This document shows positions 420 to 28,569 of a stretch of DNA of 28,569 nt, piece after piece. The DNA comes from Octopus sinensis (Eukaryota), in assembly GCF_006345805.1 (NCBI RefSeq), contig NW_021833536.1:1-28569 (forward strand). Reading direction: 5' to 3'. Below the pieces are notes generated by a model. The model searched no databases. It saw only the letters and a list, made by a program, of their open reading frames with translations, and was not told where the DNA came from. Numbering within the stretch: the first letter of the stretch is position 1; each line of letters starts with the position of its first letter. A program made the translations under genes and the position numbers.

Positions 420-490
<71 letters not shown>

Positions 491-563
491 AAGACAGACA
501 GACAGATAGAAAGACAGACAGATAGAAAGACAGATAGATAGATAGATAGATAGACAGATAGAC

Positions 564-602
<39 letters not shown>

Positions 603-2629: not shown

Positions 2630-2671
2630 GATCTATCTGCCCATCCAGACATCCATCCACCCATTCTATTA

Positions 2672-2718
<47 letters not shown>

Positions 2719-2841
2719 CATCCATTCACCCAAGCTCTATATTTGTATTTGTCCCCTGTGTTCAGCCCTGTGTGGCCAATAAAATTATCCATCCATCTAT
2801 CTATCCATCTCCCTGTCTGTCTATCTATCCATCCCCCTAAA

Positions 2842-2926
<85 letters not shown>

Positions 2927-3060
2927 ATCTATCTATCCATCCATTCACCCAAGCTCTATATTTGTATTTGTCCCCTGTGTTCAGCCCTGTGTGGCCAATA
3001 AAATTATCCATCCATCTATCTATCCATCTCCCTGTCTGTCTATCTATCCATCCCCCTAAA

Positions 3061-3144
<84 letters not shown>

Positions 3145-3147
3145 CCC

Positions 3148-3221
<74 letters not shown>

Positions 3222-4932: not shown

Positions 4933-5519
4933 AGAGAGGAGAAAACAAATTCAAAGGTCGATGTATATATTCATTCAATCCATATTAACGAAATTCTCCA
5001 TGTAATACAAAGTACATACATAGAAGCATTCATCTTTATGATATATAAGAGATTTCTAAGAATTTATAAATACATACATACACGGAAATTTATAAATATA
5101 TAAAAATTCATAGACATACAAAAAATTATAAACACATAAAAATTCATAAATATAAATATATAAAAGTACAAGTCCATAAATGCACTCGCGAAGTCTGGAT
5201 GTTCCAATTTGCACTAATGAAGGGGATGATAAAGCGGATGTAGAATGATTCATAAAGCGTCTGGAACATGTATAAAGTATATGTATAAAGTCTTATGGCC
5301 GTTACGAAAAGATATAGGTTGCTATGGGCGAGCTAGCTCCAACCATAAGCAATACTCTCTATTTCTTTCATCAGAGTTAATAGAATCACAAAGTTAAAAC
5401 TTTAAAAGAAATGGGCGAAATAATTTAATAAAAATCGAATGTAATGTTAAAGGCTAAAATGTAATACGATACTAAATATCCTATAAAGTGTATATTACGA
5501 CGCCGTATATATAATATGT

Positions 5520-5750
5520 GGAGGCGAGCTGGCAGAAACGTTAGCACGCCGGGCGAAATGCGTAGCCGTATTTCGTCTGTCGTTACGCTGTGAGTTCAAA
5601 TTCCGCCGAGGTCGACTTTGCCTTTCATCCTTTCGGGGTCGATAAATTAAGTACCAGTTACGCACTGGGGTCGATGTAATCGACTTAATACCTATGTCTG
5701 TCCTTGTTTGTCCCTTCTATGTTTAGCCCCTGGTGGGTAATAAAGAAACA
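5520..5750 (+). mobile_element. tRNA-derived SINE family A (Nin/Deu-like central domain), full length
   Basis: Head GGCGAGCTGGCAGAAACG, B box GAGTTCAAATTCC, central GCCTTTCATCCTTTCGGGGTCGATAAATTAAGTACCAG. Many homologous copies occur in the window. Confidence 0.9.
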
Positions 5751-5774
5751 GGTTAGTATATATGTCGTATATAT

Positions 5775-5887
5775 ACGGCAGGCTTCTTTCAGTTTCCGTC
5801 TACCAAATCTACTCACAAGGCTTCGGTTGGCCCGAGGCTATAGTAGAAGACACTTGCCCAAGGTGCCACGCAGTGGGACTGAACCCG
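5775..5887 (-). mobile_element. SINE family B (CORE-like) fragment
   Basis: Reverse complement of GGGTTCAGTCCCACTGCGTGGCACCTTGGGCAAGTGTC...GGAAACTGAAAGAAGCC, matching the copy at 7619. Confidence 0.85.
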
Positions 5888-5894
5888 ATATATA

Positions 5895-5932
<38 letters not shown>

Positions 5933-5940
5933 TATATGTG

Positions 5941-5986
<46 letters not shown>

Positions 5987-6496
5987 AGTAATGAAATGGC
6001 TTTGGCATTGTGATATTAGTGACTAGGTGTTAGAACTCCTCCACAGACATACTGAATTGTGTTTGGATGCTTTCGGAAGTTATAAATAACACTCTTCATT
6101 TTAATTTCTCCGAAGAAGCTATAAGATGTTGCACAAGCGGATAGCTCTGGGTGCATTACTACTTGCAGCAGAAACACCCATAAAGTAATGAAGTTAATTA
6201 GGTTAAACCCTGTTACCTTGTCATTAATTAATTAGTTTATTGATTAATTAATACACACACACATTAAAAAAATTATGGCCTTCGAAATCGCTATCATTAT
6301 TATTTGCTAATGATGTGAGAGCCAGTGACAGCCATAGTTGCCGTGAAACAAAGAGAGAGGCTCTATTTCAGGGGTTAGCGAATCGGAGTAAAATACCCTA
6401 TGTGGGGGTAAAAACGAAATTCTTGTGGGTAATGAGGATTTATCGGACATGAGTAAAAAACGTCTTCTCTTGTTACGACAATTTTTTTCTTCTGAA

Positions 6497-6918
6497 GGTG
6501 GCGAGCTGGCAGAAACGTTAGCACGCTGGGCGAAATGCTTAGCAGTATGTTATCTGTATTTACGTTCTGAGTTCAAATACCGCCGAGGTCGACTTTGCCT
6601 AACATCCTTTCGGGGTCGACAAATTAAGTACGAGTTATGCACTGGGGTCGACTTAATCCCTTTGTCTGTCCTTGTTTGTCTCCTCTATGTTTAGCCCCTT
6701 GTGGGCAACAAAGAAATAAGAAACGTTAGCAGGCCGGACGAAATGCTTAGCAGTATTTCGTCTGTCTTTACGTTCTTAGTTCAAATTCCGCCGAGGTCGA
6801 CTTTGCCTTTCATCCTTTCGGGGTCGATGAATTTAGTACTAGTTGCGTAATGGGGTCGATCTAATCGACTGGCCCCCTCCCCCTAAATTTCGGGCCTTGT
6901 GCCTAGAGTTGCAAAGAA
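6497..6918 (+). mobile_element. SINE family A head-to-tail dimer (6497-6718 plus a 5'-truncated copy 6719-6918)
   Basis: Two successive copies of the B box and central domain. The junction reads AAGAAATA|AGAAACGTTAGC. Confidence 0.9.
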
Positions 6919-6998: not shown

Positions 6999-7388
6999 TT
7001 TTACTTGTTTCAGTCATTTGACTGCGGCCATGCTGGAGCACCGCCTTTAATCGAGCAACTCGACCCCGGGACTTATTCTTTTGTAAGCCCAGTACTTATT
7101 CTATCGGTCTCTTTTGCCGAACCGCTAAGTAACGGGGACATAAACACACCAGCATCGGTTGTCAAGCAATGCTAGGGGGACAAACACAGACACACAAACA
7201 CACACACGCATACATAAATATACATATATACGACGGGCTTCTTTCAGTTTCCGTCTACCAAATCCACTCACAAGGCTTTGGTCGGCCCGAGGCTATAGTA
7301 GAAAACACTTGCCCAAGGTGCCACGCAGTGGGACTGAACCTGGAACCATGTGGTTGGTAAATAAGCTTCTTACCACACATCCATTCCT
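6999..7388 (-). mobile_element. SINE family B (tRNA head, CORE-like ACCTTGGGCAAGT, internal microsatellite, ~190-nt tail), full length
   Basis: Colinear reverse complement of 7619-8000. Confidence 0.9.
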
Positions 7389-7618
7389 ATTTATTCGTAT
7401 AAATAGATTAAATAAATATTCTGCATTCAAAGTTTCTATGATATTTTTCATTTCAAGTCAGGGAGTAACGTCAGCGTAAATAAATGTTTCGAAGTAATTA
7501 GTAAAAAACGTTCTCTGAATAAGAATGGGTTACTTGACCAGTAACAGTTGCAAGTCACCCACAAATAACAACCCACCTCTTCAAAATGAAAGTGATAGCA
7601 TTATGTATAATTAACATA

Positions 7619-8000
7619 GGCGCAGGAATGGCTGTGTGGTAAGTAGCTTGCTAACCAACCACATGGTTGCGGGTTCAGTCCCACTGCGTGGCATCTTGGG
7701 CAAGTGTCTTCTGCTATAGCCTCGGGCCGATTAATGCCTTGTGAGTGGATTTGGTAGACGGAAACTGAAAGAAGCCTGTCGTATATATATATATATATGT
7801 GTGTGTTTGTGTGTCTGTGTTTGTCCCCCTAGCATTGCTTGACAACCGATGCTGGTGTGTTTACGTCCCCGTCACTTAGCGGTTCGGCAAAAGAGACCGA
7901 TAGAATAAGTACTGGGCTTACAATAGAATAAGTACTGGGCTCGACTAAAAGGCGGTGCTCCAGCATGGCTGCAGTCAAATGACTGAAACAAGTAAAAGAG
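7619..8000 (+). mobile_element. SINE family B, full length
   Basis: Start GGCGCAGGAATGGCTGTGTGG (A box), B box GGGTTCAGTCCC, CORE-like TCTTGGGCAAGTG, tail ending GACTGAAACAAGTAAAAGAG. Confidence 0.9.
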
Positions 8001-9364: not shown

Positions 9365-9792
9365 TACTTGTTTCAGCCATTAGACTGCGGCCATGCTGGG
9401 GCATCGTCTAGAAGAATTTCATCTCAACGAATCGGATCCGGTAGTACTTTGCTTCTACTTGGTATCTTGATAGTTATTCTATCGGTCTGTTTTATCCAAA
9501 CCACTAGGTTACGGGGATGTAAATACACCAACACCGGTCGTCAAATGGAGGACAAAGACACACAAACATTTAAGACTGGTTTCTTTCATACATTTTTGTT
9601 TTGCATATATATATATATATACATATATACGACGGGCTTCTTTCAGTTTCCGTCTACCAAATCCACTCACAAGGCTTTGGTTGGCCCGAGGCTATAGTAG
9701 AAGACACTTGCCCAAGGTGCCACGCAGTGGGACTGAACCCGGAACCATGTGGTTGGTTAGCAAGCTACTTACCACACAGCCACTCCTGCACC
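9365..9792 (-). mobile_element. SINE family B, older subfamily with a divergent tail
   Basis: The head at about 9630-9792 is near-identical to other B copies. The tail at 9365-9570 is diverged. Confidence 0.85.
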
Positions 9793-9926: not shown

Positions 9927-10177
9927 GGAGAGAGAAAGAAAGTGTGTGTGTATATTTGCTGCTAGTGTTAAAAAGTACTATCAGCCGCGCCAAGTCATCA
10001 GTATCCAAACAGCTGCGCCCATTCGTCTTATTTCGTTGTTACAGTACTACAAGTAGCCACTGTGACAGCGATAACAAAAGACATATAAGCAACAACAGCA
10101 ACTGTGGAAAGAGAAAGAGTAGTAGTAGAAGTTGCCGTAGTAGTATTAGTAGCAGCAGTAGTAGTCGTAAAAATATG

Positions 10178-10593
10178 TGTTTCTTTACTACCCACAAGAG
10201 GCTAAACACAGAGGGGACAAACAAGGACAGACAACCGGATTAAGTCGATTACATCGACCCCAGTGCGTAACTGGTACTTAATTTATCGACCCCGAAAGGA
10301 TGAAAGGCAAAGTCGACCTCGGCGGAATTTGAACTCAGAACGTAACGGCAGACGAAATACCTATTTCTTTACTACCCACAAGGAGCTAAACACAGAGGGG
10401 ACAAACAAGGACAGACAAAGGTGTTAAGTCGATTACATCGACCCCAGTGCGTAACTGGTACTTAATTTATCGACCCCGAAAAGATGAAAGGCAAAGTCGA
10501 CCTCGGCGGAATTTGAACTCAGAACGTAACGGCAGACGAAAATACGGCTACGCATTTCGCCCGGCGTGCTAACGATTCTGCCAGCTCGCCGCC
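10178..10593 (-). mobile_element. SINE family A dimer (full copy 10362-10593 plus a 5'-truncated copy 10178-10361)
   Basis: Two near-identical successive copies. On the minus strand the junction reads AAAGAAATA|GGTATTTCG. Confidence 0.9.
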
Positions 10594-11230: not shown

Positions 11231-11614
11231 CTCTTTTACTTGTTTCAGTCATTTGGCTGCGGCCATGCTGGAGCACCGCTTTTAGTCAAGCGAATCGATC
11301 CCAGAACTTATTCTTTGTAAGCCTAGTACTAATTCTATCGGTCTCTTTTTGCTGAACCGTTAAGTTACGGGGACGTAAACACACCAGCATCGGTTGTCAA
11401 GCGATGTTAGGGGGGGGGGGGGACAAGCACAGACGCACAAACACATATATACAACGGGCTTCTTTCAGTTTCCGTCTACCAAATCCACTCACAAGGCTTT
11501 GGTCGGCCCGAGTCTATAATAGAAGACACTTGCCCAAGGTGCCACGCAGTGGGACTGAACCTGGAACCATATGGTTCGTAAGCAAGCTACTTGCCACACA
11601 GCCACTCCTACGCC
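11231..11614 (-). mobile_element. SINE family B, full length
   Basis: Colinear with 6999-7388. Confidence 0.9.
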
Positions 11615-11772
11615 TATGTTTAACAAGGATAATATTATTTGATCCAATATATCAATAATAGTGATTCCACAATATAGACAACGAAACAAAAAATCCGCTA
11701 ACTCATTCTAAAGAAAAAAAACAAAAAAACTTAAAGTCATTTCTATATTGGATAAAACAATTACAATCCCTC

Positions 11773-12609: not shown

Positions 12610-13132
12610 TGTGGGTGGAAGAGGGAGAAGTAGGGAGAGGGTGAGATACTGTGGAAGTGAGAGGGAAGGAGTGGGTTGGATAATGAGAAAATGACAACAA
12701 AGTATCGGAGAGGAGGAGGAGAGAGAGGGGAGATGAAGAAAGAGGAAGATTGAAAGAGGGTAAAAGAGAGCGAGAGAAATAGAGTGAGAATAGTGGGAGA
12801 AAGAGGGACAAAAGGAGTGAGAAGGAAAAAGGGAGAGAGAGAGAAAGAGGGGGATATAAGAGAGATTAAGAGAGGGGGATAGAAAGAGAGAGAGAGAGAG
12901 AAAGACAAAGAAAGAAAGAGATAGAAAGAAAGAGATAGAGACAAAGAAAGAAAGAGATAGAAACAAAGAGAGAGAGAGAGAGAGACAAAGAAAGAAAGAA
13001 AGAGAGACAAAGAAAGAAAGAGATAGATAGAAAGAAAGAAAGAGAGAGAGAGAGAAAGCACGAGTGAGAGACAGAAAGAAAGAGAAATTAAGAGAGGAGG
13101 ACAGAAAAAGCAAGAGATAAAGAGAAGGGAAG

Positions 13133-13168
<36 letters not shown>

Positions 13169-13420: not shown

Positions 13421-13519
13421 AGAGAAGATAATTGGCTGGGAGTATGTCTGGAAAAGAGGAATTTTTTGGAGTAGATACACCGTGGGGTCTTTTATCTCAT
13501 TATTTCTGGTACTCATTTA

Positions 13520-13731
13520 GGCGGTCTGTAGGCAGAATTGTTAGCACGCTGGACGGAATGTTTAGCGGTATTTAGTCCGTCTTTAAGTTCCAAGTTCAAA
13601 TTCCGCCAACGTCGACTTTGCCATCCTGCCTTTCCAGTTTGATAAACTAAAATATCAGTCGAGTACTGGACTCGATATCATCAACTGACCAACTTTTCCC
13701 GAAATTGCTGGCCTTGTGTCAAAATTTGAAA
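13520..13731 (+). mobile_element. Diverged SINE family A copy
   Basis: GGCAGAATTGTTAGCACGCTGGACGGAATG...AAGTTCAAATTCCGCC...GGCCTTGTGTC. Confidence 0.8.
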
Positions 13732-13766: not shown

Positions 13767-14150
13767 GACTGTGGCCATGTTGGAGCACCGCATTTAGTCG
13801 AGCAAATCGATCCCAGGACTTATTCTATGTAAGCCTAGTACTCATTCTATCGGTCTCTTTTGCCGAACCGCTAAGTTACGGGGACGTAAACACACCAGCA
13901 TCGGTTGTCAAGCGATGTTGGGTGGGGGGAAACACACAGACACACAAACATACATTTTTATAGATATACATTTTTATAAATATACATAAATATTACGGGC
14001 TTCTTTCAGTTTCCGTCTACCAAATCCACTTACAAGGCTTTGGTCGTCCCGAGGCTTTAGTAGAAGACACTTTCCCAAGGTGCCATGCAGTGGGACCGAA
14101 CCCGGAACAATGTGGTTCGTAAGCAAGCTACTTACCACACAGCCACTCCT
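13767..14150 (-). mobile_element. SINE family B, near full length
   Basis: Colinear with 11231-11614. Confidence 0.9.
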
Positions 14151-14151
14151 T

Positions 14152-14266
14152 TTCCTTTCATCCTTTCGGGATCGATAAATTAAGTGCCAGTGAAACACTG
14201 AGTTCGATGCAATCGACCGCCCCCCTCCCAAAAATCCAGGCCTTGTGCCTATAGTAGAAAGGATTG
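14152..14266 (+). mobile_element. SINE family A 3' half fragment
   Basis: CCTTTCATCCTTTCGGGATCGATAAATTAAG...GGCCTTGTGCCTATAGTAGAAAGG. Confidence 0.8.
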
Positions 14267-14376
14267 CTGAGACTCCTTCGGTCATGAGATTGCACCTAGA
14301 AAGTTACCCTCCCAGGCACAAGTCCGGGCAAAGGATTATTATTATAATTATTATTATTATTATTATTATTACTTAA

Positions 14377-14590
14377 GGCGGCGAGCTGGCAGAATCGTTA
14401 GCACACCAGGCAAAATGCTTAGCGGCATTTCGTTCGTCTTTGCGTTTTGTGTTCAAATTCCGTTGAGGTCGACTTTGCCATTCATCCTTTCAGGGTCGAT
14501 AAACTAAGTACCAGTCATGTACTGGGGTCGATGTAATCGACTTATCTCTTGCCCCGAAATTGCCGGCCTTGTGCCAGAATCTGAAGCCAA
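14377..14590 (+). mobile_element. SINE family A, full length, preceded by (ATT)n
   Basis: Head GGCGGCGAGCTGGCAGAATCG, B box, central domain and GGCCTTGTGCC tail. Confidence 0.9.
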
Positions 14591-14717
14591 TATTTCTTAT
14601 ACTCTGCGTTAGCAAATTTATATTTTAACCGTTTATCCGATCTGTGCATCGCAGGTGGGGCGAACGGTTAATACACCGGGGATATGTTTGTTTGGTGTCC
14701 ATGTATCATATATGATA

Positions 14718-15143
14718 CACAGGCCCAATTTTTTTCATCCTCCAGAGTTAGCTTGGGTCTTAGTAAAAGAGGGCTTTATATTAATCAGAACGTATGAAGT
14801 AAAGGTTAACTAAAAGTCCGAAAACATTCTGATGATCAGGGGAAAGCTATGAAAATGCTTTGGGCTGGTAAAAGATTAAGACAGTCCTGTTTCAGCTGAT
14901 ATACGATCTAAAATGCTCCAGCCGTGACTACACAGTCCAATTTTTTCATCCTCAAGAGTTAGCTTGGGACTTATGAAAAGAGAGCTTTATATTAATCAGA
15001 AGGTATGAAATAAGGGTTAACTAAAAGTCTGAAAACATTCTGATGTTCAGGGGAAATCTATGAAAATACTTTGGGCAGGTAAAAGGTTAAGACAATCCTG
15101 TTTCAGCAGATATATGATCAAAAAAGCTCCAGCCGGGACTACA
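14718..15143. repeat. Two diverged tandem copies of a ~213-bp unit
   Basis: CCAATTTTTTTCATCCTC.AGAGTTAGCTTGGG...GCTCCAGCCG.GACTACA starts at 14718 and at 14931. Identity is roughly 85% by eye. Confidence 0.9.
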
Positions 15144-16086: not shown

Positions 16087-16470
16087 CTTTTCTACTCTAG
16101 GCACAAGGCCTGAAATTTTGGAGGAGGGGGGGCAATCGATTAGATCGACCCCGAAAGGATGAAAGGCAAAGTTGACCTCGTCGGAATTTGAACACAGAAC
16201 GTAGCGATAGGCGAAATACCTGTTTTTTTATTACCCACAAGGGGCTAAACATAGAGGGGACACACAAGGACAGGCATATGGATTAAGTCGATTACATCGA
16301 CCCCAGTGCGTAACTGGTACTTAATTTATCGTCCCCGAAAGTATAAAAAGCAAAGTTGACCTCAGCAGAATTTGCACTCAGAACATCGACCCCAGTACTT
16401 GACTGGTACTTAATTTATCGACCCCGAAAGGATGAAAGACAAAGTCGACCTCGGCGGAATTTGAACTCAG
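16087..16470 (-). mobile_element. Three tandem partial SINE family A copies
   Basis: The GACCTCGGCGGAATTTGAACTCAG-like B-box segment occurs three times. Junctions fall at about 16220/16221 and 16383/16384. Confidence 0.85.
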
Positions 16471-17599: not shown

Positions 17600-18420
17600 T
17601 CCAATCAACATATGTGAGTGTAAGAGAGAGAGAAGGGGGGAGAAAGACAGAGAGATTGAGAGGAAGAAGAGGGGGTGGGAAGATAAAGAGAGAGGGAGAG
17701 AAAGGATGAGAGGGGGTGAGAGAGGGGAGTGTGTGAGAATGGAAAAGATTGAGATAGAAATAATTGAAGAGGAGAGACACATACAGGAGAGAGAATGAGA
17801 GAGAGATAATGAGAGAGAGAGAATGAGAGAGAGAGAGAGAGAATGTGAGAGAGAGAGAGAATGAGAGAGAGAGAATGTGTGAGAGAGAGAATGAGAGAGA
17901 GAGAATGAGAGAGAGAGAGAATGTGTGAGAGAGAGAATGAGAGAGGGAGAGAATGAGAGAGAGAGAAAGAGAATGTGTAAGAGAGAGAATGAGAGAGAGA
18001 GAGAACGAGAGAGAGAATGAAAGAGAGAGAGAAAGGGAGAGAGAGAGAGAGGGAAGGAGAGAGAGAGAGAGAATGAGAGAGAGAGAGAGAAAGAGAGAGA
18101 GAGAATGAGAGAGAAAGAGAGAGAGAACGAGAGAGAGAGAGAATGAGAGAGAGAGAGAGAATGAGAGAGAAAGAGAGAGAGCGAGGATGAGAGAGAGAGA
18201 GAGAGAATGAGAGAGAAAGAATGAGAGAGAGCGAAGGAGAGAGAGAGAATGAGAGAGAGAGAATGAGAGAGAGAGAATGAGAGAGAGAGAGAATGAGAGA
18301 GAAAGAGAGAATGAGAGAGAGAGAATGAGAGAGAGAGAGAGAGAATGAGAGAGAGAAAATCATTGAGAGAAAAGGAGAGAAGGATCAGAAAACAAGAAAA
18401 CGAGAGAATGTAAACGAAAA
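17600..18420. repeat. (GA)n tract with recurring GAGAAT interruptions
   Basis: Read directly from the sequence. It generates the spurious ORFs 17486-18646 and 17605-18363. Confidence 0.95.
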
Positions 18421-18569: not shown

Positions 18570-19260
18570 TAATTAAGACTGGAAACAGACACACACACAC
18601 GCACGCACACACACAAACATACATACATATAATCATGCATACACACAAATACACGAACCTATACATACACAAATGTATACAACCACATTTGCAGATACAT
18701 ACACACATACATATATTCATATATTCATATACACATGTACACACGCATACATACATACATACATACATGCATACATACATACATACATACATAGATGCAT
18801 ACATACATATATACATACATACATACATACATGCATACATACATACACACATACACACATACATACATACATAGATACACACATACACACACACATACTT
18901 ACATACATACACACATACACACATACATACATACATACACACATACACACACATACATACATACATACATACACATACATACATACATACATACATACAT
19001 ACACACATACACACACATACATACATACATACATACACATACATACATACATACATACATACATACATACACATACACATACATACATACATACATACAT
19101 ACACATACATACATACATACATACATACATACAATTTCACGTCTTTATCTCAAACATCCATCGTAACGCATCCATACTCAAAACACATACATAAGTACAC
19201 ACACACACACGCCACACACACACACACGTATACGCACACATATGTTCATACACCTACGTA
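18570..19260. repeat. (CATA)n/(CA)n microsatellite
   Basis: Read directly from the sequence. Confidence 0.95.
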
Positions 19261-19590: not shown

Positions 19591-19879
19591 CTTATATATA
19601 TATAATATATATATATATACATATATATACATACGCAATATTTGCACATATACACATATAAATACGCATCCTCTCATATGCGAGTATATACATACATACA
19701 CTTGTATACAACCATACATGTGCACACAAAGACACACAGAGACACACATACGCATATATATAAATACATACGAATAAAATACGGAAATAGATACATATAA
19801 ATATATATATGAATACACACACATATCCACGTATACACACTCATACATACACACAGAACACACACTCATACACACATTC

Positions 19880-20300
19880 ACGCACATATGCATATACACA
19901 TACATACAAATGCATACAACTATACACACACACTGATGCGCAGATACACGCACATATGCACATACATACAAATAGATACAGCTACACACTCACACGCATA
20001 CACACTCACAGATTAGCAGATACACACACATAAACACATACATACAAATGCATACAGCTACACACGCACACACACATACATACATACACGCAGATACACG
20101 CACATATGCACATACATACAAATGCATACAGCTACACACACACACATATATACACACGCACAGATGCGCAGATACACGCACACATACACATACATACAAA
20201 TGCATACAGCTACGCACACACACACACACCCACACACACACCCACACACACACATACAAACACACAGATGCGCAAACACACACACGCACATATTCACACA
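19880..20300. repeat. CA-rich minisatellite, about 5 copies of a ~75-bp unit
   Basis: GCAGATACACGCACATATGCACATACATACAAATGCATACAGCTAC recurs at about 19940, 20018, 20090 and 20168. Confidence 0.75.
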
Positions 20301-21519
20301 TACACGCGCGCACAGATATTTAAAATGCAAATTATTTACAAGTTTTATTTAATTTAGAAGATCAGGCAGTAAAGATTGATATGCCAGGTCACAGGTTCAA
20401 ACCTCGATTAGTTCATTTAGTAACGCTCCACGTATCACACACAACCGACATTTTCCCCTTCCCGTTTGCCTCGTCTTGATATTTTTCTAATTGTCATTAT
20501 TTTACATTTTGTTAATTTTTGCTGAAATCAACTTAAAATTCTTCTCGTTCTTGTTATTATCATTTATTATTATCAATGTTGTTCAGGCCTTTTTTGTTAT
20601 ACTTTTTCATCTTGTAACAGTCTTCATAATTATCGTTATCCCCATCGTTTTACTGGCTTTTAGAACTATCTTTCGTTTGTAAAATTGTTGTTATGATTTT
20701 CCTATTGTTGTTGTTGTCATATCGTACTGTTGTAGTTGTTGTTATAAACATTGATATTTTTTGTTATGTCCCTTATTTCTGTTTTCCTTTTCTCCCCACA
20801 GTTATTGCCATTGTTATTGGTCCCCGTTACTGTCATTGTTATTGTAGCTACCATTATCTTAGTTAAGCTTGTTGTTTGTATTCCTTGTTGTTATTATAGT
20901 TATTTCCCTTGTCGTTTGTTGTAGGTTACAGCTGTTTTGTTATATACTGTTGTTGCAGCTATTATTAACATGACCAGCGTTATCATATTACGGTCAAAAC
21001 TAAAAACGATGTTGTTGTTATACTTCTTTACGCTTCTAACGTCGCCGTCTTCGTCATTGCTGCTCGTGTTTGCTAATTTCATTCTGACAAGCGCTGGAGA
21101 GCAAGAGGTTATAAAAGGCGAAGAACTATTCGCGAGCCCCAAGTCTTTGATTTCAGCTCACTTATATCATTCATCCTATTGGAAACCAATAAACGTCATA
21201 GTTTTCCTTTCCACCCGTCCAACCGTGACAATCCTTAACCATCCTCTGTAAAAACAGCGTTTCTATGTGTTTAATTAGTCATTAATCTGGTTAGGTCGTT
21301 AAATAAGGGCCTTGGAGCAACATGTAGATTGAAGTCATACAAAAAACAAAAAAACAAAAACAAAAAAACAAAACAAAAAAAATTCAGAATTGAATTTTCC
21401 ATTTCGGCCATTTTACTCGGGAAATGCCATTAACAGTGTTGGGAAAATGTATGAAAGCCACAACATCCTGTTTTATTTTCGTACTTTACAAAAAGGGAAT
21501 TACAGCGCAGTTAGTGCTT

Positions 21520-21685
21520 TACACACACACACACACACACAAACACACTCACACAAACAACACACGCACACACACACACACTCACACACATACACACACA
21601 AATACAAACACACACACACATACACACACACACAAACACACACACACAAATACAAACACACACACACAAACACACACACACACAT
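21520..21685. repeat. (CA)n microsatellite
   Basis: Read directly from the sequence. Confidence 0.95.
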
Positions 21686-21897
21686 TAATGTTTGCGTTTA
21701 TGTTCAGTTATACAAAAAAAAATCAAAGCAATCTTACATTAATTTGATGGGTTACTCTTATTCTTTTGTAGAGTGCAAATTTATCATTCTAATAAAAGAA
21801 TGTTACTGACTGTGACTTCGAAGTGTCGGTCAGCTGATACATATATATATATATTATATATATATATATATATAATATGATATTATAATATATATAT

Positions 21898-21983
21898 GGA
21901 CGTACGTTTCGAGATCAAGTTTTAGGATAGCGTAAGAATTAGAAAATTCTACTTACCCGTACTTCTTCTCTCATCGGCGCAGG
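21898..21983 (-). ncRNA. Type I hammerhead ribozyme motif L1, truncated 1 nt after the cleavage site
   Basis: The minus strand reads CCTGCG-CCGATGA-helix II-GAAAC-GTAC-GTC^C and then (AT)n. The 3' strand of helix I is absent. Confidence 0.7.
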
Positions 21984-22474
21984 ATACTACAATTATTATA
22001 ATATTGTATATTAAATTTTGAGATACTAGAATGCATCATCTCAACTCAGAGCGAGCTCAAGCATGACCAGTACCACGAAATTCAAGTTTGAATGAAGGTT
22101 TGTGTCACCAGCCCCCTTCCACCCGCGTGTAGCCAAGATAAAATGCTGTGGTCATTTACTGGGATAAAATATGGTTATCAGTAATAATAAAAAAAGGTGA
22201 AACTAATTAATTAGGGATAATTATCAATTACACCAAGTAGATTTCAGCATGTAAAAGCCCCATTCGAGGAAAATTTAAGTAATACTAAGTAATTAAGGGT
22301 TTAGCAACGAATTGCCTCACCAACACACCGAATTTAGAAATAGCAGTCAAAGAGATATAGCTATTCCTTCTACTAAAAGGGGGATCTCAGTAAAAACACA
22401 GCACTTGAAAGGCAAACACAGACAGGTAAGAAGAAAAATGAAATGACGGCAATCCATCATGCAATTTTACGTTA

Positions 22475-22566
22475 CCTACGGACGTACGTTTCGAGATCAA
22501 GTTTTAGGATAGCGTAAGATTTAGAAAATTCTACTTTACCCGTACTTCTTCTCTCATCGGCGCAGG
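22475..22566 (-). ncRNA. Type I hammerhead ribozyme motif L2 (predicted cut 22481|22480)
   Basis: Complete motif CCUGCG/CCGAUGA/GAGA..UCUC/GAAAC-GUAC-GUC^CGUAGG. Confidence 0.8.
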
Positions 22567-23059
22567 ATACTACAATTATGAATAATTGTATATTAAATTT
22601 TGAGATACTAGAATGCATCATCTCAACTCAGAGCGAGCTAAAGCATGACCAGTACCACGAAATTCAAAGTTTGAATGAAGGTTTGTGTCACCAGCCCCCT
22701 TCCACCCGCGTGTAGCCAAGATAAAATGCTGTGGTCATTTACTGGGATAAAATATGGTTATCAGTAATAATAAAAAAAGGTGAAACTAATTAATTAGGGA
22801 TAATTATCAATTACACCAAGTAGATTTCAACATGTAAAAGCCCCATTCGAGGAAAATTTAAGTAATACTAAGTAATTAAGGGTTTAGCAACGAATTGCCT
22901 CACCAACACACCGAATTTAGAAATAGCAGTCAAAGAGATATAGCTATTCCTTCTACTAAAAGGGGGATCTCAGTAAAAACACAGCACTTGAAAGGCAAAC
23001 ACAGACAGGTAAGAAAGAAAGAATGAAATGACGGCAATCCATCATGCAATTTTACGTTA

Positions 23060-23151
23060 CCTACGGACGTACGTTTCGAGATCAAGTTTTAGGATAGCGT
23101 AAGAATTAGAAAATTCTACTTTACCCGTACTTCTTCTCTCATCGGCGCAGG
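23060..23151 (-). ncRNA. Type I hammerhead ribozyme motif L3 (predicted cut 23066|23065)
   Basis: Complete motif as in L2. Confidence 0.8.
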
Positions 23152-23643
23152 ATACTACAATTATGAATAATTGTATATTAAATTTTGAGATACTAGAATG
23201 CATCATCTCAACTCAGAGCGAGCTAAAGCCTGACCAGTACCACGAAATTCAAAGTTTGAATGAAGGTTTGTGTCACAGCCCCCTTCCACCCGCGTGTAGC
23301 CAAGATAAAATGCTGTGGTCATTTACTGGGATAAAATATGGTATCAGTAATAATAAAAAAAGGTGAAACTAATTAATTAGGGATAATTATCAATTACACC
23401 AAGTAGATTTCAGCATGTAAAAGCCCCATTCGAGGAAAATTTAAGTAATACTAAGTAATTAAGGGTTTAGCAACGAATTGCCTCACCAACACACCGAATT
23501 TAGAATAGCAGTCAAAGAGATATAGCTATTCCTTCTACTAAAAGGGGGATCTCAGTAAAAACACAGCACTTGAAAGGCAAAAACACAGACAGGTAAGAAA
23601 GAAAGAATGAAATGACGGCAATCCATCATGCAATTTTACGTTA

Positions 23644-23735
23644 CCTACGGACGTACGTTTCGAGATCAAGTTTTAGGATAGCGTAAGAATTAGAAAATTC
23701 TACTTTACCCGTACTTCTTCTCTCATCGGCGCAGG
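23644..23735 (-). ncRNA. Type I hammerhead ribozyme motif L4 (predicted cut 23650|23649)
   Basis: Complete motif as in L2. Confidence 0.8.
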
Positions 23736-24008
23736 ATACTACAATTATGAATAATTGATATTAAATTTTGAGATACTAGAATGCATCATCTCAACTCAGA
23801 GCGAGCTAAAGCATGACCAGTACCACGAAATTCAAAGTTTGAATGAAGGTTGTGTCACCAGCCCCCTTCCACCCGCGTGTAGCCAAGATAAAATGCTGTG
23901 GTCATTTACTGGGATAAAATATGGGTCATGCTTTAGCTCGCTCTGAGTTGAGATGATGCATTCTAGTATCTCAAAATTTAATATACAATTATTCATAATT
24001 GTAAGTAT

Positions 24009-24100
24009 CCTGCGCCGATGAGAGAAGAAGTACGGGTAAAGTAGAATTTTCTAATTCTTACGCTATCCTAAAACTTGATCTCGAAACGTACGTCCGTAGG
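24009..24100 (+). ncRNA. Type I hammerhead ribozyme motif R1 (predicted cut after 24094)
   Basis: Helix I 24009-24014/24095-24100, core CCGATGA 24015-24021, helix II 24022-24082 closed by GAGA/TCTC, GAAA 24083-24086, C-GTAC-G 24087-24092, TC 24093-24094. Confidence 0.8.
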
Positions 24101-24589
24101 TAACGTAAAATTGCATGATGGATTGCCGTCATTTCATTCTTTCTTTCTTACCTGTCTGTGTTTGCCTTTCAAGTGCTGTGTTTTTACTGAGATCCCCCTT
24201 TTAGTAGAAGGAATAGCTATATCTCTTTGACTGCTATTTCTAAATTCGGTGGGTTGGTGAGGCAATTCGTTGCTAAACCCTTAATTACTTAGTATTACTT
24301 AAATTTTCCTCGAATGGGGCTTTTACATGCTGAAATCTACTTGGTGTAATTGATAATTATCCCTAATTATTAGTTCACCTTTTTTTTATTACTGATAACC
24401 ATATTTTATCCCAGTAAATGACCACAGCATTTTATCTTGGCTACACGCGGGTGGAAGGGGGCTGGTGACACAAACCTTCATTCAAACTTTGAATTTCGTG
24501 GTACTGGTCATGCTTTAGCTCGCTCTGAGTTGAGATGATGCATTCTAGTATCTCAAAATTTAATATACAATTATTCATAATTGTAGTAT

Positions 24590-24680
24590 CCTGCGCCGAT
24601 GAGAGAAGAAGTACGGGTAAAGTAGAATTTTCTAATTCTTACGCTATCCTAAAACTTGATCTCGAACGTACGTCTGTAGG
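24590..24680 (+). ncRNA. Hammerhead motif R2 (cut after 24674); one A of GAAA is missing
   Basis: Reads CTCGAACGTACGTCTGTAGG: a core deletion (real or a sequencing error) plus a C>U change at the first pair of helix I. Confidence 0.6.
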
Positions 24681-25177
24681 TAACGTAAAATTGCATGATG
24701 GATTGCCGTCATTTCATTCTTTCTTTCTTACCTGTCTGTGTTTGCCTTTCAAGTGCTGTGTTTTTACTGAGATCCCCCTTTTAGTAGAAGGAATAGCTAT
24801 ATCTCTTTGACTGCTATTTCTAAATTCGGTGTGTTGGTGAGGCAATTCGTTGCTAAACCCTTAATTACTTAGTATTACTTAAATTTTCCTCGAATGGGGC
24901 TTTTACATGCTGAAATCTACTTGGTGTAATTGATAATTATCCCTAATTAATTATTTCACCTTGTTTTTTTTTTACTTATTACTGATAACCATTTTTATCC
25001 CAGTAAATGACCACAGCATTTTATCTTGGCTACACGCGGGTGGAAGGGGGCTGGTGACACAAACCTTCATTCAAACTTTGAATTTCGTGGTACTGGTCAT
25101 GCTTTAGCTCGCTCTGAGTTGAGATGATGCATTCTAGTATCTCAAAATTAATATACAATTATTCATAATTGTAGTAT

Positions 25178-25269
25178 CCTGCGCCGATGAGAGAAGAAGT
25201 ACGGGTAAAGTAGAATTTTCTAATTCTTACGCTATCCTAAAACTTGATCTCGAAACGTACGTCCGTAGG
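25178..25269 (+). ncRNA. Type I hammerhead ribozyme motif R3 (cut after 25263)
   Basis: Complete motif. Confidence 0.8.
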
Positions 25270-25762
25270 TAACGTAAAATTGCATGATGGATTGCCGTCA
25301 TTTCATTCTTTCTTTCTTACCTGTCTGTGTTTGCCTTTCAAGTGCTGTGTTTTTACTGAGATCCCCCTTTTAGTAGAAGGAATAGCTAATCTCTTTGACT
25401 GCTATTTCTAAATTCGGTGTGTTGGTGAGGCAATTCGTTGCTAAACCTTAATTACTTAGTATTACTTAACTTAAATTTTCTCGAATGGGGCTTTTACATG
25501 TTGAAATCTACTTGGTGTAATTGATAATTATCCCTAATTAATTAGTTTCACCTTTTTTATTATTACTGATAACCATATTTTATCCCAGTAAATGACCACA
25601 GCATTTTATCTTGGCTACACGCGGGTGGAAGGGGGCTGGTGACACAAACCTTCATTCAAACTTTGAATTTCGTGGTACTGGTCATGCTTTAGCTCGCTCT
25701 GAGTTGAGATGATGCATTCTAGTATCTCAAAATTTATATACAATTATTCATAATTGTAGTAT

Positions 25763-25854
25763 CCTGCGCCGATGAGAGAAGAAGTACGGGTAAAGTAGAA
25801 TTTTCTAATTCTTACGCTATCCTAAAACTTGATCTCGAAACGTACGTCCGTAGG
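25763..25854 (+). ncRNA. Type I hammerhead ribozyme motif R4 (cut after 25848)
   Basis: Complete motif. Confidence 0.8.
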
Positions 25855-26347
25855 TAACGTAAAATTGCATGATGGATTGCCGTCATTTCATTCTTTCTTT
25901 CTTACCTGTCTGTGTTTGCCTTTCATGCTGTGTTTTTTACTGAGATCCCCCTTTTAGTAGAAGGAATAGCTATATCTCTTTGACTGCTATTTCTAAATTC
26001 GGTTGTTGGTGAGGCAATTCGTTGCTAAACCCTTAATTACTTAGTATTACTTAAATTTTCCTCGAATGGGGCTTTTACATGCTGAATCTACTTGGTGTAA
26101 TTGATAATTATCCCTAATTAATTAGTTTCACCTTTTTTATTATTACTGATAACCATATTTTATTATCCCAGTAAATGACCACACAGCATTTTATCTTGGC
26201 TACACGCGGGTGGAAGGGGGCTGGTGACACAAACTTCATTCAAACTTTGAATTTCGTGGTACTGGTCATGCTTTAGCTCGCTCTGAGTTGAGATGATGCA
26301 TTCTAGTATCTCAAAATTTAATATACAATTATTCATAATTGTAGTAT

Positions 26348-26439
26348 CCTGCGCCGATGAGAGAAGAAGTACGGGTAAAGTAGAATTTTCTAATTCTTAC
26401 GCTATCCTAAAACTTGATCTCGAAACGTACGTCCGTAGG
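26348..26439 (+). ncRNA. Type I hammerhead ribozyme motif R5 (cut after 26433)
   Basis: Complete motif. Confidence 0.8.
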
Positions 26440-26930
26440 TAACGTAAAATTGCATGATGGATTGCCGTCATTTCATTCTTTCTTTCTTACCTGTCTGTGT
26501 TTGCCTTTCAAGTGCTGTGTTTTTACTGAGATCCCCCTTTTAGTAGAAGGAATAGCTATATCTCTTTGACTGCTATTTCTAAATTCGGTGTGTTGGTGAG
26601 GCAATTCGTTGCTAAACCCTTAATTACTTAGTATTACTTAAATTTTCCTCGAATGGGGCTTTTACATGCTGAAATCTACTTGGTGTAATGATAATTATCC
26701 CTAATTAATTAGTTTCATCACCTTTTTTTTATTACTGATAACCATATTTTATCCCAGTAAATGACCACAGCATTTTATCTTGGCTACACGCGGGTGGAAG
26801 GGGGCTGGTGACACAAACCTTCATTCAAACTTTGAATTTCGTGGTACTGGTCATGCTTTAGCTCGCTCTGAGTTGAGATGATGCATTCTAGTATCTCAAA
26901 ATTAATATACATTATTCATAATTGTAGTAT

Positions 26931-27021
26931 CCTGCGCGATGAGAGAAGAAGTACGGGTAAAGTAGAATTTTCTAATTCTTACGCTATCCTAAAACTTGAT
27001 CTCGAAACGTACGTCCGTAGG
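26931..27021 (+). ncRNA. Hammerhead motif R6 (cut after 27015); one C of CCGATGA is missing
   Basis: Reads CCTGCGCGATGAG: a 1-nt core deletion (real or a sequencing error). Confidence 0.6.
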
Positions 27022-27513
27022 TAACGTAAAATTGCATGATGGATTGCCGTCATTTCATTCTTTCTTTCTTACCTGTCTGTGTTTGCCTTTCAAGTGCTGT
27101 GTTTTTACTGAGATCCCCCTTTTAGTAGAAGGAATAGCTATATCTCTTTGACTGCTATTTCTAAATTCGGTGTGTTGGTGAGGCAATTCGTTGCTAAACC
27201 CTTAATTACTTAGTATTACTTAAATTTTCCTCGAATGGGGCTTTTACATGCTGAAATCTACTTGTGTAATTGATAATTATCCCTAATTAATTAGTTTCAC
27301 CTTTTTTTATTATTACTGATAACCATATTTTATCCCAGTAAATGACCACAGCATTTTATCTTGGCTACACGCGGGTGGAAGGGGGCTGGTGACACAAACC
27401 TTCATTCAAACTTTGAATTTCGTGGTACTGGTCATGCTTTAGCTCGCTCTGAGTTGAGATGATGCATTCTAGTATCTCAAAATTTAATATACAATTATTC
27501 ATAATTGTAGTAT

Positions 27514-27605
27514 CCTGCGCCGATGAGAGAAGAAGTACGGGTAAAGTAGAATTTTCTAATTCTTACGCTATCCTAAAACTTGATCTCGAAACGTACGTCC
27601 GTAGG
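27514..27605 (+). ncRNA. Type I hammerhead ribozyme motif R7 (cut after 27599)
   Basis: Complete motif. Confidence 0.8.
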
Positions 27606-28093
27606 TAACGTAAAATTGCATGATGGATTGCCGTCATTTCATTCTTTCTTTCTTACCTGTCTGTGTTTGCCTTTCAAGTGCTGTGTTTTTACTGAGATCC
27701 CCCTTTTAGTAGAAGGAATAGCTATATCTCTTTGACTGCTATTTCTAAATTCGGTGTGTTGGTGAGGCAATTCGTTGCTAAACCCTTAATTACTTAGTAT
27801 TACTTAAATTTTCCTCGAATGGGGCTTTTACATGTTGAAATCTACTTGGTGTAATTGATAATTCCCTAATTAATTATTTTCACCTTTTTTTATGATTACT
27901 GATAACCATATTTTATCCCAGTAAATGACCACAGCATTTTATCTGGCTACACGCGGTGGAAGGGGGCTGGTGACACAAACCTTCATTCAAACTTTGAATT
28001 TCGTGTACTGGTCATGCTTTAGCTCGCTCTGAGTTGAGTATGATGCATTCTAGTATCTCAAAATTTAATATACATTATTCATAATTGTAGTAT

Positions 28094-28185
28094 CCTGCGC
28101 CGATGAGAGAAGAAGTACGGGTAAAGTAGAATTTTCTAATTCTTACGCTATCCTAACACTTGATCTCGAAACGTACGTCCGTAGG
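28094..28185 (+). ncRNA. Type I hammerhead ribozyme motif R8 (cut after 28179)
   Basis: Complete motif. Confidence 0.8.
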
Positions 28186-28421
28186 TAACGTAAAATTGCA
28201 TGATGATTGCCGTCATTTCATTCTTTCTTTCTTACCTGTCTGTGTTTGCCTTCAAGTGCTGTGTTTTTACTGAGATCCCCCTTTTAATAGAAGGAATAGC
28301 TATATCTCTTTGACTGCTATTTCTAAATTCGGTGTGTTGGTGAGGCAATTCGTTGCTAAACCCTTAATTACTTAGTATAGATAGATAGATAGATAGATAC
28401 ACATATTCTCTTATTCTCTAA

Positions 28422-28569
28422 TTTGTTTCAGTCATTTTGACTGCGCCATTGCTGGAGCACCGCCTTTAGTCGAACAAATTGATCCCAGGACTTATTCTTT
28501 GTATACGTAGTACTTATTCTATTGCCCCATTTTGCCGAACCGCAGAGTTACGGGGCGTAAACACACTAA
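28422..28569 (-). mobile_element. SINE family B 3' tail, cut by the window edge
   Basis: TTGTTTCAGTCATTTTGACTGCGCCATTGCTGGAGCACCGCCTTTAGTCG matches other B tails. Confidence 0.85.

What the first reader, a model, noticed from the sequence alone, without database searches (positions are those of the whole stretch)
21898..28378. Tandem array of ~585-nt units, each with a hammerhead ribozyme: a candidate cephalopod retrozyme / self-cleaving circRNA element
Seen: about 11 near-identical non-coding units carrying 12 copies of CCUGCG-CCGAUGA-[GAGA...UCUC]-GAAAC-GUAC-GUC^CGUAGG. All three helices and the core sit in type I order. The predicted cuts are 580-589 nt apart. Known: tandem type I hammerhead repeats occur in newt satellite 2, Schistosoma Sm-alpha, cricket pDo500 and metazoan non-LTR retrozymes. 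Their read-through transcripts self-cleave into monomers that can circularise, and they are thought to be mobilised by autonomous retroelements such as Penelope-like elements. Inference: this is such an element. At ~585 nt the monomer is longer than the few-hundred-nt monomers I recall for animal retrozymes, and I know of no description in octopus.
Basis: partly seen in the sequence, partly recalled or inferred. Interest (0 to 1): 0.95.

Follow-up and report, generated by a model that had tools for sequence, protein, structure and literature searches.

The report
Retrozyme-like repeat with variant hammerhead
A 6.5-kb block of about 584-nt non-coding repeats, each carrying a hammerhead-type self-cutting RNA motif with one unusual core base, looks like a recently inserted animal "retrozyme", a known kind of mobile element; one end of it stops at the predicted RNA cut site.

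Summary
Window 21898-28378 holds about 11 units of a 584-nt non-coding repeat (95-99.5% identical) and 12 copies of the motif, with predicted cuts 580-589 nt apart. It is not one tandem array. About 3.5 units lie on the minus strand (21898-23924) and about 7.6 on the plus strand (23925-28378), joined head-to-head. Nine of the 12 motifs are intact.

The motif has the usual metazoan type I hammerhead architecture: helix I of 6 bp, helix II starting with 4 bp including G10.1-C11.1, GAAA, and a 2-bp helix III inside a palindrome ACGUACGU. It appears in 1 of 20,000 shuffled units. It deviates in two ways: the core is CCGAUGA (U4C), and helix II carries a 53-nt extension. Rfam Hammerhead_1 therefore scores only 18 bits against a gathering score of 34.

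The layout resembles insertions made by Penelope-like elements: an inverted 5'-truncated block, microsatellite flanks, mostly private variants, and one outer end within 1 nt of the predicted cut.

The best reading is a young non-LTR retrozyme-like insertion. Self-cleavage, circular RNA, other copies and the host organism could not be tested. The unit length is within the published range. Moderate interest.

The parts
21898..23924 (-). Minus-strand block: a 5'-truncated unit (starting at consensus position 308) plus three full units. Its outer 3' end is ...GAAACGUACGUC(C), within 1 nt of the predicted hammerhead cut.
23925..28378 (+). Plus-strand block: a 5'-truncated unit (starting at consensus position 416), seven full units and a 3'-truncated unit that ends at consensus position 201.
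23922..23927 (.). Head-to-head junction of the two blocks. It has a 3-nt microhomology (TGG) and is not a symmetric fold-back (23% identity under that model).
26348..26439 (+). Representative intact hammerhead-like motif, 92 nt: helix I CCUGCG/CGUAGG, core CCGAUGA (U4C), 61-nt helix II arm, GAAA, helix III AC-GUAC-GU, cut after GUC at 26433. Identical intact copies have cuts at 24094, 25263, 25848, 27599 and 28179 (+) and at 22481, 23066 and 23650 (-).
26361..26421 (+). Helix II arm, 61 nt: a 4-bp base GAGA/UCUC, then a 2x2 internal loop and an imperfect hairpin (MFE -16.0 kcal/mol, z = -2.9). It occupies the position of the usual 4-bp stem plus loop 2.
24589..24680 (+). Defective motif copy: GAAAC changed to GAAC (core A lost) and C1.1 changed to U.
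26930..27021 (+). Defective or miscalled motif copy: the core reads CGAUGA, with one C missing.
21837..21897 (.). (AT)n microsatellite abutting the cut-site end of the minus block; the presumed target sequence.
28379..28398 (.). (AGAT)5 microsatellite abutting the mid-unit end of the plus block, followed from about 28420 by a SINE-like element.

Best explanation
This is a young insertion of a non-autonomous, non-LTR retrozyme-like element. It consists of multimers of a 584-nt non-coding RNA gene, and each unit ends in a type I hammerhead-like ribozyme.

Proposed working:
- Read-through transcripts of the multimer fold so that two neighbouring motifs pair their palindromic ACGUACGU segments into an 8-bp helix III (a double hammerhead). 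Each motif may also fold alone, with a 2-bp helix III.
- The RNA is cut after GUC, releasing 584-nt linear monomers with 5'-OH and 2',3'-cyclic phosphate ends.
- A host tRNA ligase can close these monomers into circles.
- The DNA copy seen here was made by target-primed reverse transcription using the enzymes of an autonomous retroelement, most likely a Penelope-like element. Both strands of a staggered break in microsatellite DNA primed cDNA synthesis on this RNA.
- One cDNA started at the ribozyme-made 3' end (the minus block, ending at GUC). The other started internally (the plus block). The two were joined in the middle by microhomology, which produces two blocks with their 5' ends facing.

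Shown: the repeat, the motif and its improbability, the predicted folds, the layout, the ends and the junction.
Inferred: transcription, cleavage despite U4C, circularisation, RNA-mediated insertion, and the identity of the mobiliser.
For: - Motif architecture. Helix I is 6 bp, helix II starts with 4 bp including G10.1-C11.1, then GAAA, A15.1-U16.1 and C17, with a 2-bp helix III and a palindromic tetraloop. This is the published consensus for metazoan type I hammerheads (PMC4209133; PMC7229834 describes 2 bp plus a tetraloop as typical of invertebrates).
- Chance. The motif appears in 1 of 20,000 shuffled units.
- Rfam. Hammerhead_1 is the top hit over the full model 1-45, at 18 bits and E = 0.039, when one motif is scanned alone.
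- Dimer. Cofolding two motifs gives the double hammerhead, at -56.8 kcal/mol against 2 x -25.0.
- Whole-unit fold. Helices I and II are both present in the MFE structure of the whole unit, which is unusually stable (z = -4.4).
- One polarity only. The motif occurs in one polarity, and no other ribozyme family matches.
- Unit properties. GC is 36-37%. ORFs are at most 91 aa and have no homologues.
- Variation. 77 of 85 variable columns are private to one unit, which suggests a single recent burst.
- Layout. There is a tandem block plus an inverted 5'-truncated block, flanked by microsatellites including (TA)n. This is what is described for Penelope-like insertions (PMC8557442).
- End position. 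One outer end lies within 1 nt of the predicted cut, with P about 0.01 for either of two ends.
- U4C precedent. A natural U4C variant has low activity in vitro but is still sufficient in vivo (PMC3088659).
Against: - U4 is a conserved core position. All copies have C there or lack the base, and no canonical CUGANGA copy exists in the window.
- The Rfam score is well below the gathering threshold, and there is no hit when the whole region is scanned.
- The 53-nt extension replaces loop 2, so the usual loop 1-loop 2 tertiary contact cannot be assumed.
- The single-motif MFE (-25.0) is an alternative fold that sequesters the core; the hammerhead fold is -21.1.
- No other copy, transcript or relative could be found, so there is no covariation or conservation evidence.
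- Lower variability in the hammerhead segment is weak evidence (p = 0.017 with indels, 0.19 with substitutions only).
- No reverse transcriptase or PLE ORF lies in the window.
- In the one PLE studied in vitro, reverse transcription starts internally and hammerhead cleavage is not required (PMC11167929). Ends defined by the ribozyme are therefore not an expected PLE signature.
- The end coincidence is a single event.
- The plus block ends in the middle of a unit.
- No target-site duplication or PLE 'tail' was identified.
Confidence: 0.62

Rival explanations
1. This is an ordinary satellite or segmental repeat carrying a dead hammerhead relic. The motif descends from a real ribozyme but is inactivated by U4C. 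The array grew by DNA-level processes (replication slippage, unequal crossing-over), and the opposite orientation of the two blocks comes from a later inversion.
For: U4C is present in every copy and no canonical core exists. The Rfam score is below threshold. No other copies or transcripts were found. A T variant in alignment column 242 is shared by units in both blocks, which could reflect DNA-level exchange.
Against: The variation is star-like, with 77 of 85 variable columns private and no higher-order structure. The two inner ends are 5'-truncated at different unit positions and joined by microhomology. One outer end falls within 1 nt of the cut site (P about 0.01). Microsatellite flanks match PLE target preference (PMC8557442). 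A simple inversion of part of an array would not by itself place an end at the cut site.
Confidence: 0.22
2. The head-to-head arrangement is an assembly artefact (a chimeric or fold-back long read), and the real locus is a single one-directional tandem array of the same hammerhead-bearing unit.
For: Many differences between units are 1-nt homopolymer indels, which are typical of long-read consensus noise. Tandem repeats are prone to misassembly.
Against: The junction is not symmetric: sequence to the right of it is 23% identical to the reverse complement of the left. The two blocks start at different unit positions, 308 and 416. The blocks carry different private variants. This rival concerns only the layout, not the nature of the unit.
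Confidence: 0.08
3. The repeat is the pseudo-LTR or untranslated part of an autonomous Penelope-like element, or a deletion derivative of one, rather than a separate non-autonomous retrozyme family.
For: PLE pseudo-LTRs carry hammerheads and form tandem and inverted structures (PMC8557442, PMC4209133). Xenopus retrozymes are sister to PLE pseudo-LTRs (bioRxiv 10.64898/2026.07.22.740005).
Against: No reverse transcriptase or endonuclease ORF lies in the array or anywhere in the 28.5-kb window. About 11 consecutive units are uninterrupted by coding sequence. This rival overlaps with the main explanation, because retrozymes are proposed to derive from PLEs.
Confidence: 0.06
4. The hammerhead resemblance is a chance match inside an unrelated repeat.
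For: The Rfam score is below threshold, and one core position does not match.
Against: Only 1 of 20,000 shuffled units satisfies even the relaxed descriptor. Features not required by the descriptor also fit: G10.1-C11.1, a fully palindromic ACGUACGU, helix I of exactly 6 bp, and helix II with an internal loop after 4 bp. The array end also sits at the cut site.
Confidence: 0.02

Closest known systems
Metazoan non-LTR retrozymes (coral, mussel, axolotl; Cervera and de la Pena 2020, PMC7229834; vertebrate survey, bioRxiv 10.64898/2026.07.22.740005)
   Same: Tandem, AT-rich, non-coding units, each with one type I hammerhead in a single polarity. Helix III is 2 bp plus a tetraloop, as in invertebrate examples. 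The predicted monomer is highly base-paired. The unit length lies inside the reported range of 51-972 bp.
   Different: The core is CCGAUGA rather than CUGAUGA. Helix II is a 61-nt arm instead of 4 bp plus loop 2. Expression, circularity, copy number and dispersal are unknown here. The array consists of two opposed blocks.
Penelope-like element insertions and their hammerheads (PMC8557442, PMC4209133, PMC11167929)
   Same: Partial tandems with an adjacent inverted 5'-truncated copy. Preference for microsatellite targets, including (TA)n. Hammerheads with a small palindromic helix III that are thought to act as dimers. Initiation of reverse transcription without homology to the target, as at the plus-block end.
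   Different: There is no RT/GIY-YIG ORF. No 30-40-bp 'tail' was recognised. One end coincides with the ribozyme cut, whereas for the Anolis element PAc no ends at the cut site were seen and cleavage was dispensable in vitro.
Satellite hammerheads: newt satellite 2, Schistosoma Sm-alpha, Dolichopoda pDo500 (PMC2837043)
   Same: A tandem satellite-like repeat whose multimeric transcripts would be processed to monomers. Double-hammerhead potential. The pDo500 unit (463-505 bp) is of similar size.
   Different: Those hammerheads are compact (about 49 nt for pDo500) and have canonical cores. They are conserved across many species and their cleavage has been shown experimentally; none of that is available here.
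Natural hammerhead core variants (Perreault et al. 2011, PMC3088659)
   Same: A single deviation at a conserved core position in an otherwise well-formed hammerhead. A U4C variant is cited there as weak in vitro yet sufficient in vivo for viroid infectivity.
   Different: That precedent is a viroid hammerhead. Here U4C is fixed in all copies of a genomic repeat and is combined with a long helix II arm, and its activity is untested.
L1 'twin priming' inversions (from my own knowledge of non-LTR retrotransposition)
   Same: Two cDNAs primed from the two strands of the target and joined by microhomology, giving an insertion whose two parts face each other with their 5' ends.
   Different: That mechanism is described for LINE-1 with poly(A) priming. 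Here the template would be a multimeric or repeatedly copied ribozyme RNA with no poly(A).

Membership tests
Hammerhead ribozyme, type I (Rfam RF00163) | Three helices around the core in type I order (helix I open; helices II and III closed) | tested here: met
   The descriptor hits 9 copies with helix I of 6 bp, helix II of at least 4 bp and helix III of 2 bp plus a 4-nt loop. The Rfam alignment covers model positions 1-45.
Hammerhead ribozyme, type I (Rfam RF00163) | Conserved 5' core C3-U4-G5-A6-N7-G8-A9 | tested here: not met
   The core reads CCGAUGA (C at position 4) in 11 copies and CGAUGA in one. No CUGANGA-type motif exists in the window.
Hammerhead ribozyme, type I (Rfam RF00163) | Conserved 3' core G12-A13-A14, A15.1-U16.1, H17 and the G10.1-C11.1 pair | tested here: met
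   GAGA...UCUC-GAAA-C-GUAC-GUC with C17 in 11 of 12 copies; the copy near 24663 has lost one A.
Hammerhead ribozyme, type I (Rfam RF00163) | Score at or above Rfam's gathering threshold | tested here: not met
   18 bits against 34 for a single motif. No hit in scans of the whole window or whole region.
Hammerhead ribozyme, type I (Rfam RF00163) | Site-specific self-cleavage after H17 | not testable with these tools
   Needs in vitro transcription or RNA mapping. The only indirect hint is the array end within 1 nt of the predicted site.
Metazoan non-LTR retrozyme | Short tandem repeats (about 150-1000 bp), each with a type I hammerhead; no LTR, PBS or PPT; low GC | tested here: met
   584-nt units in two tandem blocks; GC 36-37%; no long terminal repeats. 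This holds only if the U4C motif is accepted as a hammerhead.
Metazoan non-LTR retrozyme | Non-coding, non-autonomous | tested here: met
   ORFs are at most 91 aa and interrupted in every frame. No homologues were found for sense or antisense ORFs.
Metazoan non-LTR retrozyme | Expressed as monomer-length linear and circular RNA | not testable with these tools
   No transcript data were reachable. Exact-ORF look-ups in public assemblies found nothing.
Metazoan non-LTR retrozyme | Multiple dispersed loci in the genome, and co-occurrence with Penelope-like elements | not testable with these tools
   There is no other copy and no RT ORF in the remaining 22 kb of the window. The source genome is not in the searchable DNA collections.
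Penelope-like-element type insertion | Tandem copies with an adjacent inverted 5'-truncated copy | tested here: met
   The blocks meet 5'-to-5' at 23924/23925, truncated at unit positions 308 and 416.
Penelope-like-element type insertion | Insertion into microsatellite, (TA)n preferred | tested here: met
   (AT)n at 21837-21897 and (AGAT)5 at 28379-28398 flank the array directly.
Penelope-like-element type insertion | A 30-40-bp 'tail' at one end, and/or a target-site duplication | tested here: inconclusive
   No tail or clear duplication was recognised at either end. The low-complexity flanks make this unreliable.

The most novel reading that the evidence does not exclude
The locus is a molecular fossil of how animal retrozymes move. 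A hammerhead-cleaved linear RNA (a multimer, or monomers copied end to end) served as template, reverse transcription began exactly at the ribozyme-made 3' end on one strand of the target and internally on the other, and the two cDNAs were joined head-to-head. If array ends across the genome pile up at GUC, that would be the first genomic evidence that ribozyme cleavage defines the retrotransposition template. This would contrast with the internal initiation seen for the one Penelope-like element studied in vitro. In addition, the U4C core with a 61-nt helix II arm would be a naturally active hammerhead variant that standard models miss.
Probability: 0.2. Interest if true: 0.6.

Novelty: new variant of a known kind. 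Interest (0 to 1): 0.4.

Why it matters
Animal retrozymes are a recently recognised source of abundant small circular RNAs, and how they are mobilised is still inferred rather than shown. This locus adds three things:
- A hammerhead-like motif that escapes Rfam thresholds because of a core U4C and a long helix II arm. Surveys based on canonical models would undercount elements of this kind.
- A very young insertion whose ends and internal junction can still be read.
- An outer end at the predicted cut site, which turns the question of whether the ribozyme defines the template for reverse transcription into something that can be counted across a genome.

Type I hammerheads have already been counted in a squid genome. 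The kind of element, its unit size and its arrangement are otherwise already described.

Tried and rejected
- Rfam at gathering threshold on the whole window and at E <= 10 on 21500-28569 gave no hammerhead. The only hits were weak RCNMV_5UTR matches (25-28 bits against 75), which merely follow the helix II arm and which I reject as chance.
- TRF missed the array because its period limit is 500.
- Routes to other copies all failed. Exact look-ups of three recurrent unit ORFs in public assemblies found nothing. Homology searches with a sense 91-aa ORF and an antisense 67-aa ORF found nothing.
- The DNA pattern GATGAG-N45-75-CGAAACGTACGTC gave 118 stretches in metagenome contigs, 1 in viral contigs and 77 in prokaryote genome contigs. 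None of the 196 stretches held as loci resembled the unit or passed the descriptor.
- Organism identification failed. A SINE-derived ORF found one unnamed Logan protein, whose contig shares both SINE families at 65-80% identity. A literature search for the run accession and for SINE strings found nothing. ARAGORN found no tRNA-like heads.
- Rejected: the fold-back artefact model (23% identity).
- Rejected: a viroid-like or HDV-like replicon, because the motif occurs in one polarity only and no other ribozyme family matches.
- A possible imperfect duplication, GATACATATAT on the left and GATACACATAT on the right, was judged not significant in low-complexity flanks.

Full report
**1. What is there**

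A search for the 3' half of the claimed motif (GAAACGTACGTCCGTAGG, up to 3 mismatches) gives 12 matches against 0.01 expected from shuffles. Taking the predicted cut after GUC, successive cuts are 580, 589, 585, 585, 582, 584 and 580 nt apart on the plus strand. On the minus strand they are 582, 585 and 584 nt apart. The ten full units are 94.8-99.5% identical and give a 584-nt consensus. The coordinates 21898-28378 are correct. TRF did not report the array only because its period limit is 500.

**2.

The region is not one tandem array. The repeat finder reports direct-repeat families at 21852-23867 and at 23892-28378, and long inverted repeats between them at 96-100% complementarity. The AT skew changes sign near 24000. 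Four motifs are on the minus strand and eight on the plus strand.

The blocks meet at 23924/23925 with their 5' ends facing. The minus block starts at consensus position 308 and the plus block at position 416. TGG is shared at the junction. The arrangement is not a symmetric fold-back, since identity under that model is 23%. That argues against a simple chimeric-read artefact.

**3. The motif**

Each intact copy reads CCUGCG-CCGAUGA-[61-nt arm GAGA...UCUC]-GAAA-C-GUAC-GUC^CGUAGG. My own type I descriptor required:
- helix I of at least 5 bp
- C[U/C]GANGA
- helix II of at least 4 bp
- GAAA
- helix III of at least 2 bp with a 3-8 nt loop
- U then H, followed by the helix I partner strand

It finds nine intact copies and nothing else in the window. 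With a canonical CUGANGA core it finds nothing. Three copies are defective:
- one is cut off by the array end
- one has lost an A of GAAA and has C1.1 changed to U
- one reads CGAUGA

The relaxed descriptor is satisfied by 1 of 20,000 dinucleotide-shuffled circular units on either strand, so the motif is not a chance match.

Its dimensions are those given for most metazoan type I hammerheads: helix I of 6 bp, helix II of 4 bp, and helix III of 1-2 bp capped by a small palindromic loop (PMC4209133). A 2-bp stem with a tetraloop is described as typical of invertebrates (PMC7229834).

**4. Rfam**

Rfam gives no hit at gathering threshold on the window and no hammerhead at E <= 10 on 21500-28569. 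When one motif is scanned alone, with laxer filters, the top hit is Hammerhead_1 (RF00163). It covers the full model 1-45 at 26348-26439, scoring 18 bits against a gathering score of 34, with E = 0.039 and a 57-nt insertion in helix II. The shortfall is explained by the insertion and by C at position 4.

The weak RCNMV_5UTR hits on every unit (25-28 bits against 75) follow the helix II arm and are chance.

**5. Predicted folding**

- The helix II arm folds as an imperfect 61-nt hairpin, -16.0 kcal/mol with z = -2.9.
- The whole unit has an MFE of -156.8 kcal/mol with z = -4.4, and helices I and II are part of that global structure.
- A single 92-nt motif prefers an alternative fold (-25.0) that pairs core bases with the palindrome. 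The hammerhead fold is -21.1.
- Two motifs together fold into the classic double hammerhead with an 8-bp ACGUACGU helix III, at -56.8 against 2 x -25.0.

This fits the published logic that such hammerheads cut in multimers and spare the monomer (PMC4209133). It remains a prediction.

After 6 bp of helix I and 4 bp of helix II there are internal loops, at the distances where loops 1 and 2 normally touch. Whether they interact is unknown.

**6. The U4C problem**

U4 is a conserved core position, and every copy has C there or lacks the base. Perreault et al. state that core changes are generally assumed to destroy function. They also note that a U4C variant considerably decreases activity in vitro while keeping enough activity in vivo for viroid infectivity (PMC3088659). 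Activity here is therefore plausible but unproven. I do not file the motif as a canonical hammerhead.

**7. The layout as evidence of origin**

Of 85 variable alignment columns, 77 are private to one unit. This star-like pattern is expected if all units were copied at once from nearly uniform templates. A few variants are shared, one of them across both blocks (column 242), so the templates may not have been fully uniform. Many differences are 1-nt homopolymer indels and may be assembly noise.

The minus block ends, in its own sense, at ...GAAACGUACGUC(C) followed directly by (AT)n. That is within 1 nt of the predicted cut. The chance that either of two ends falls that close is about 0.01. I saw no complementarity between the flank and the unit sequence just past the cut, which favours initiation at a template end.

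The plus block ends at unit position 201 against (AGAT)5, again without visible homology.

Craig et al. describe Penelope-like insertions as partial tandems, often with an inverted 5'-truncated copy next to them, and with a strong bias for microsatellites, including (TA)n (PMC8557442). This locus has all three features.

A caution comes from the one PLE reconstituted in vitro. There, reverse transcription starts at internal sites without homology to the target, hammerhead cleavage was not needed, and no RNA ends at the cut site were seen (PMC11167929). A ribozyme-defined end is therefore not an established PLE signature. It is also a single observation here.

**8. What it is not**

- The unit is non-coding: ORFs are at most 91 aa, and no homologues were found.
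- It carries no other Rfam ribozyme and no motif in the opposite polarity, so it is not viroid-like or delta-like.
- No reverse transcriptase ORF lies in the window.
- No other copy of the unit lies in the other 22 kb.

**9. Comparison with what is known**

- retrozyme family consensus lengths of 51-972 bp are reported, with a mean of 650 bp in ray-finned fishes (bioRxiv 10.64898/2026.07.22.740005)
- circRNAs of 150 to over 1000 nt are reported (PMC7229834)
- the pDo500 cricket satellite unit is 463-505 bp (PMC2837043)

Type I hammerheads have been counted in a cephalopod genome: 235 Hammerhead_1 loci in the giant squid (PMC6962438). I found no paper describing cephalopod retrozymes.

I could not verify that the window is cephalopod. 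A SINE-derived ORF led only to an unnamed Logan contig that shares both SINE families at 65-80% identity, and literature string searches found nothing.

**10. Verdict**

This is best read as a young non-LTR retrozyme-like insertion carrying a variant (U4C, long helix II) type I hammerhead-like motif, in a layout typical of Penelope-like mobilisation (confidence about 0.6).

The main rival is a satellite with a dead ribozyme relic (about 0.2). Cleavage, circular RNA, dispersal and conservation are untested, and all routes to relatives failed.

The kind of element is known. The variant core, the helix II arm and the end at the cut site are the parts worth following up. Interest is 0.4.

Noticed in passing
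window ~5755-5933, 7001-7388, 7595-7995 (inverted), 9607-9787, 11236-11638, 13769-14150, 28420-28569: An interspersed SINE-like family containing CTGCGGCCATGCTGGAGCACCGCC..., with at least 7 copies at 60-94% identity. One copy lies directly to the right of the array. ARAGORN finds no tRNA-like head.
   Followed up: partly
window ~5499-5718, 6476-6903, 10101-10541, 13499-13650, 14149-14575, 16110-16470: A second interspersed family (ACATCGACCCCAGTGCGTAACTGGTACTTAATTTATCGACCCCGAAAGG...GGAATTTGAACTCAG). It includes internal tandem duplications of 184 nt (10180-10541) and 89 nt (16294-16470), and it often sits next to the first family.
   Followed up: partly
L197 1-1264 (Logan contig from run SRR11869384): A public short contig carries both SINE-like families at 65-80% identity to the window copies, so it comes from a related organism. 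The organism name was not available from the tools.
   Followed up: partly
window 2665-3160 and 14716-15143: A 219-nt unit repeated 2.3 times inside (ATCT)n tracts, and a 211-nt unit repeated twice (89% matches). Their nature was not examined.
   Followed up: no
window 77-1200, 12765-13166, 17787-18356, 18695-19133, 19813-20317, 21521-21684: Very dense microsatellite and low-complexity DNA: (AGAT)n, (GA)n of 570 nt, (ATAC)n of 440 nt, AC-rich 74-152-nt repeats, and (AC)n. These produce long spurious ORFs. No convincing protein-coding gene was seen in the window.
   Followed up: no
window 21835-21845 and 28393-28404: Similar short strings, GATACATATAT on the left and GATACACATAT on the right, lie near the two outer flanks of the array. 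This could be a remnant target-site duplication, but it is not significant in sequence of such low complexity.
   Followed up: partly
alignment column 242 of the units (units 25264-25848, 27600-28179 and minus-strand 23065-22481): A C-to-T variant is shared by three non-adjacent units across both blocks. This hints at non-uniform templates or gene conversion, against an otherwise star-like pattern of variation.
   Followed up: no
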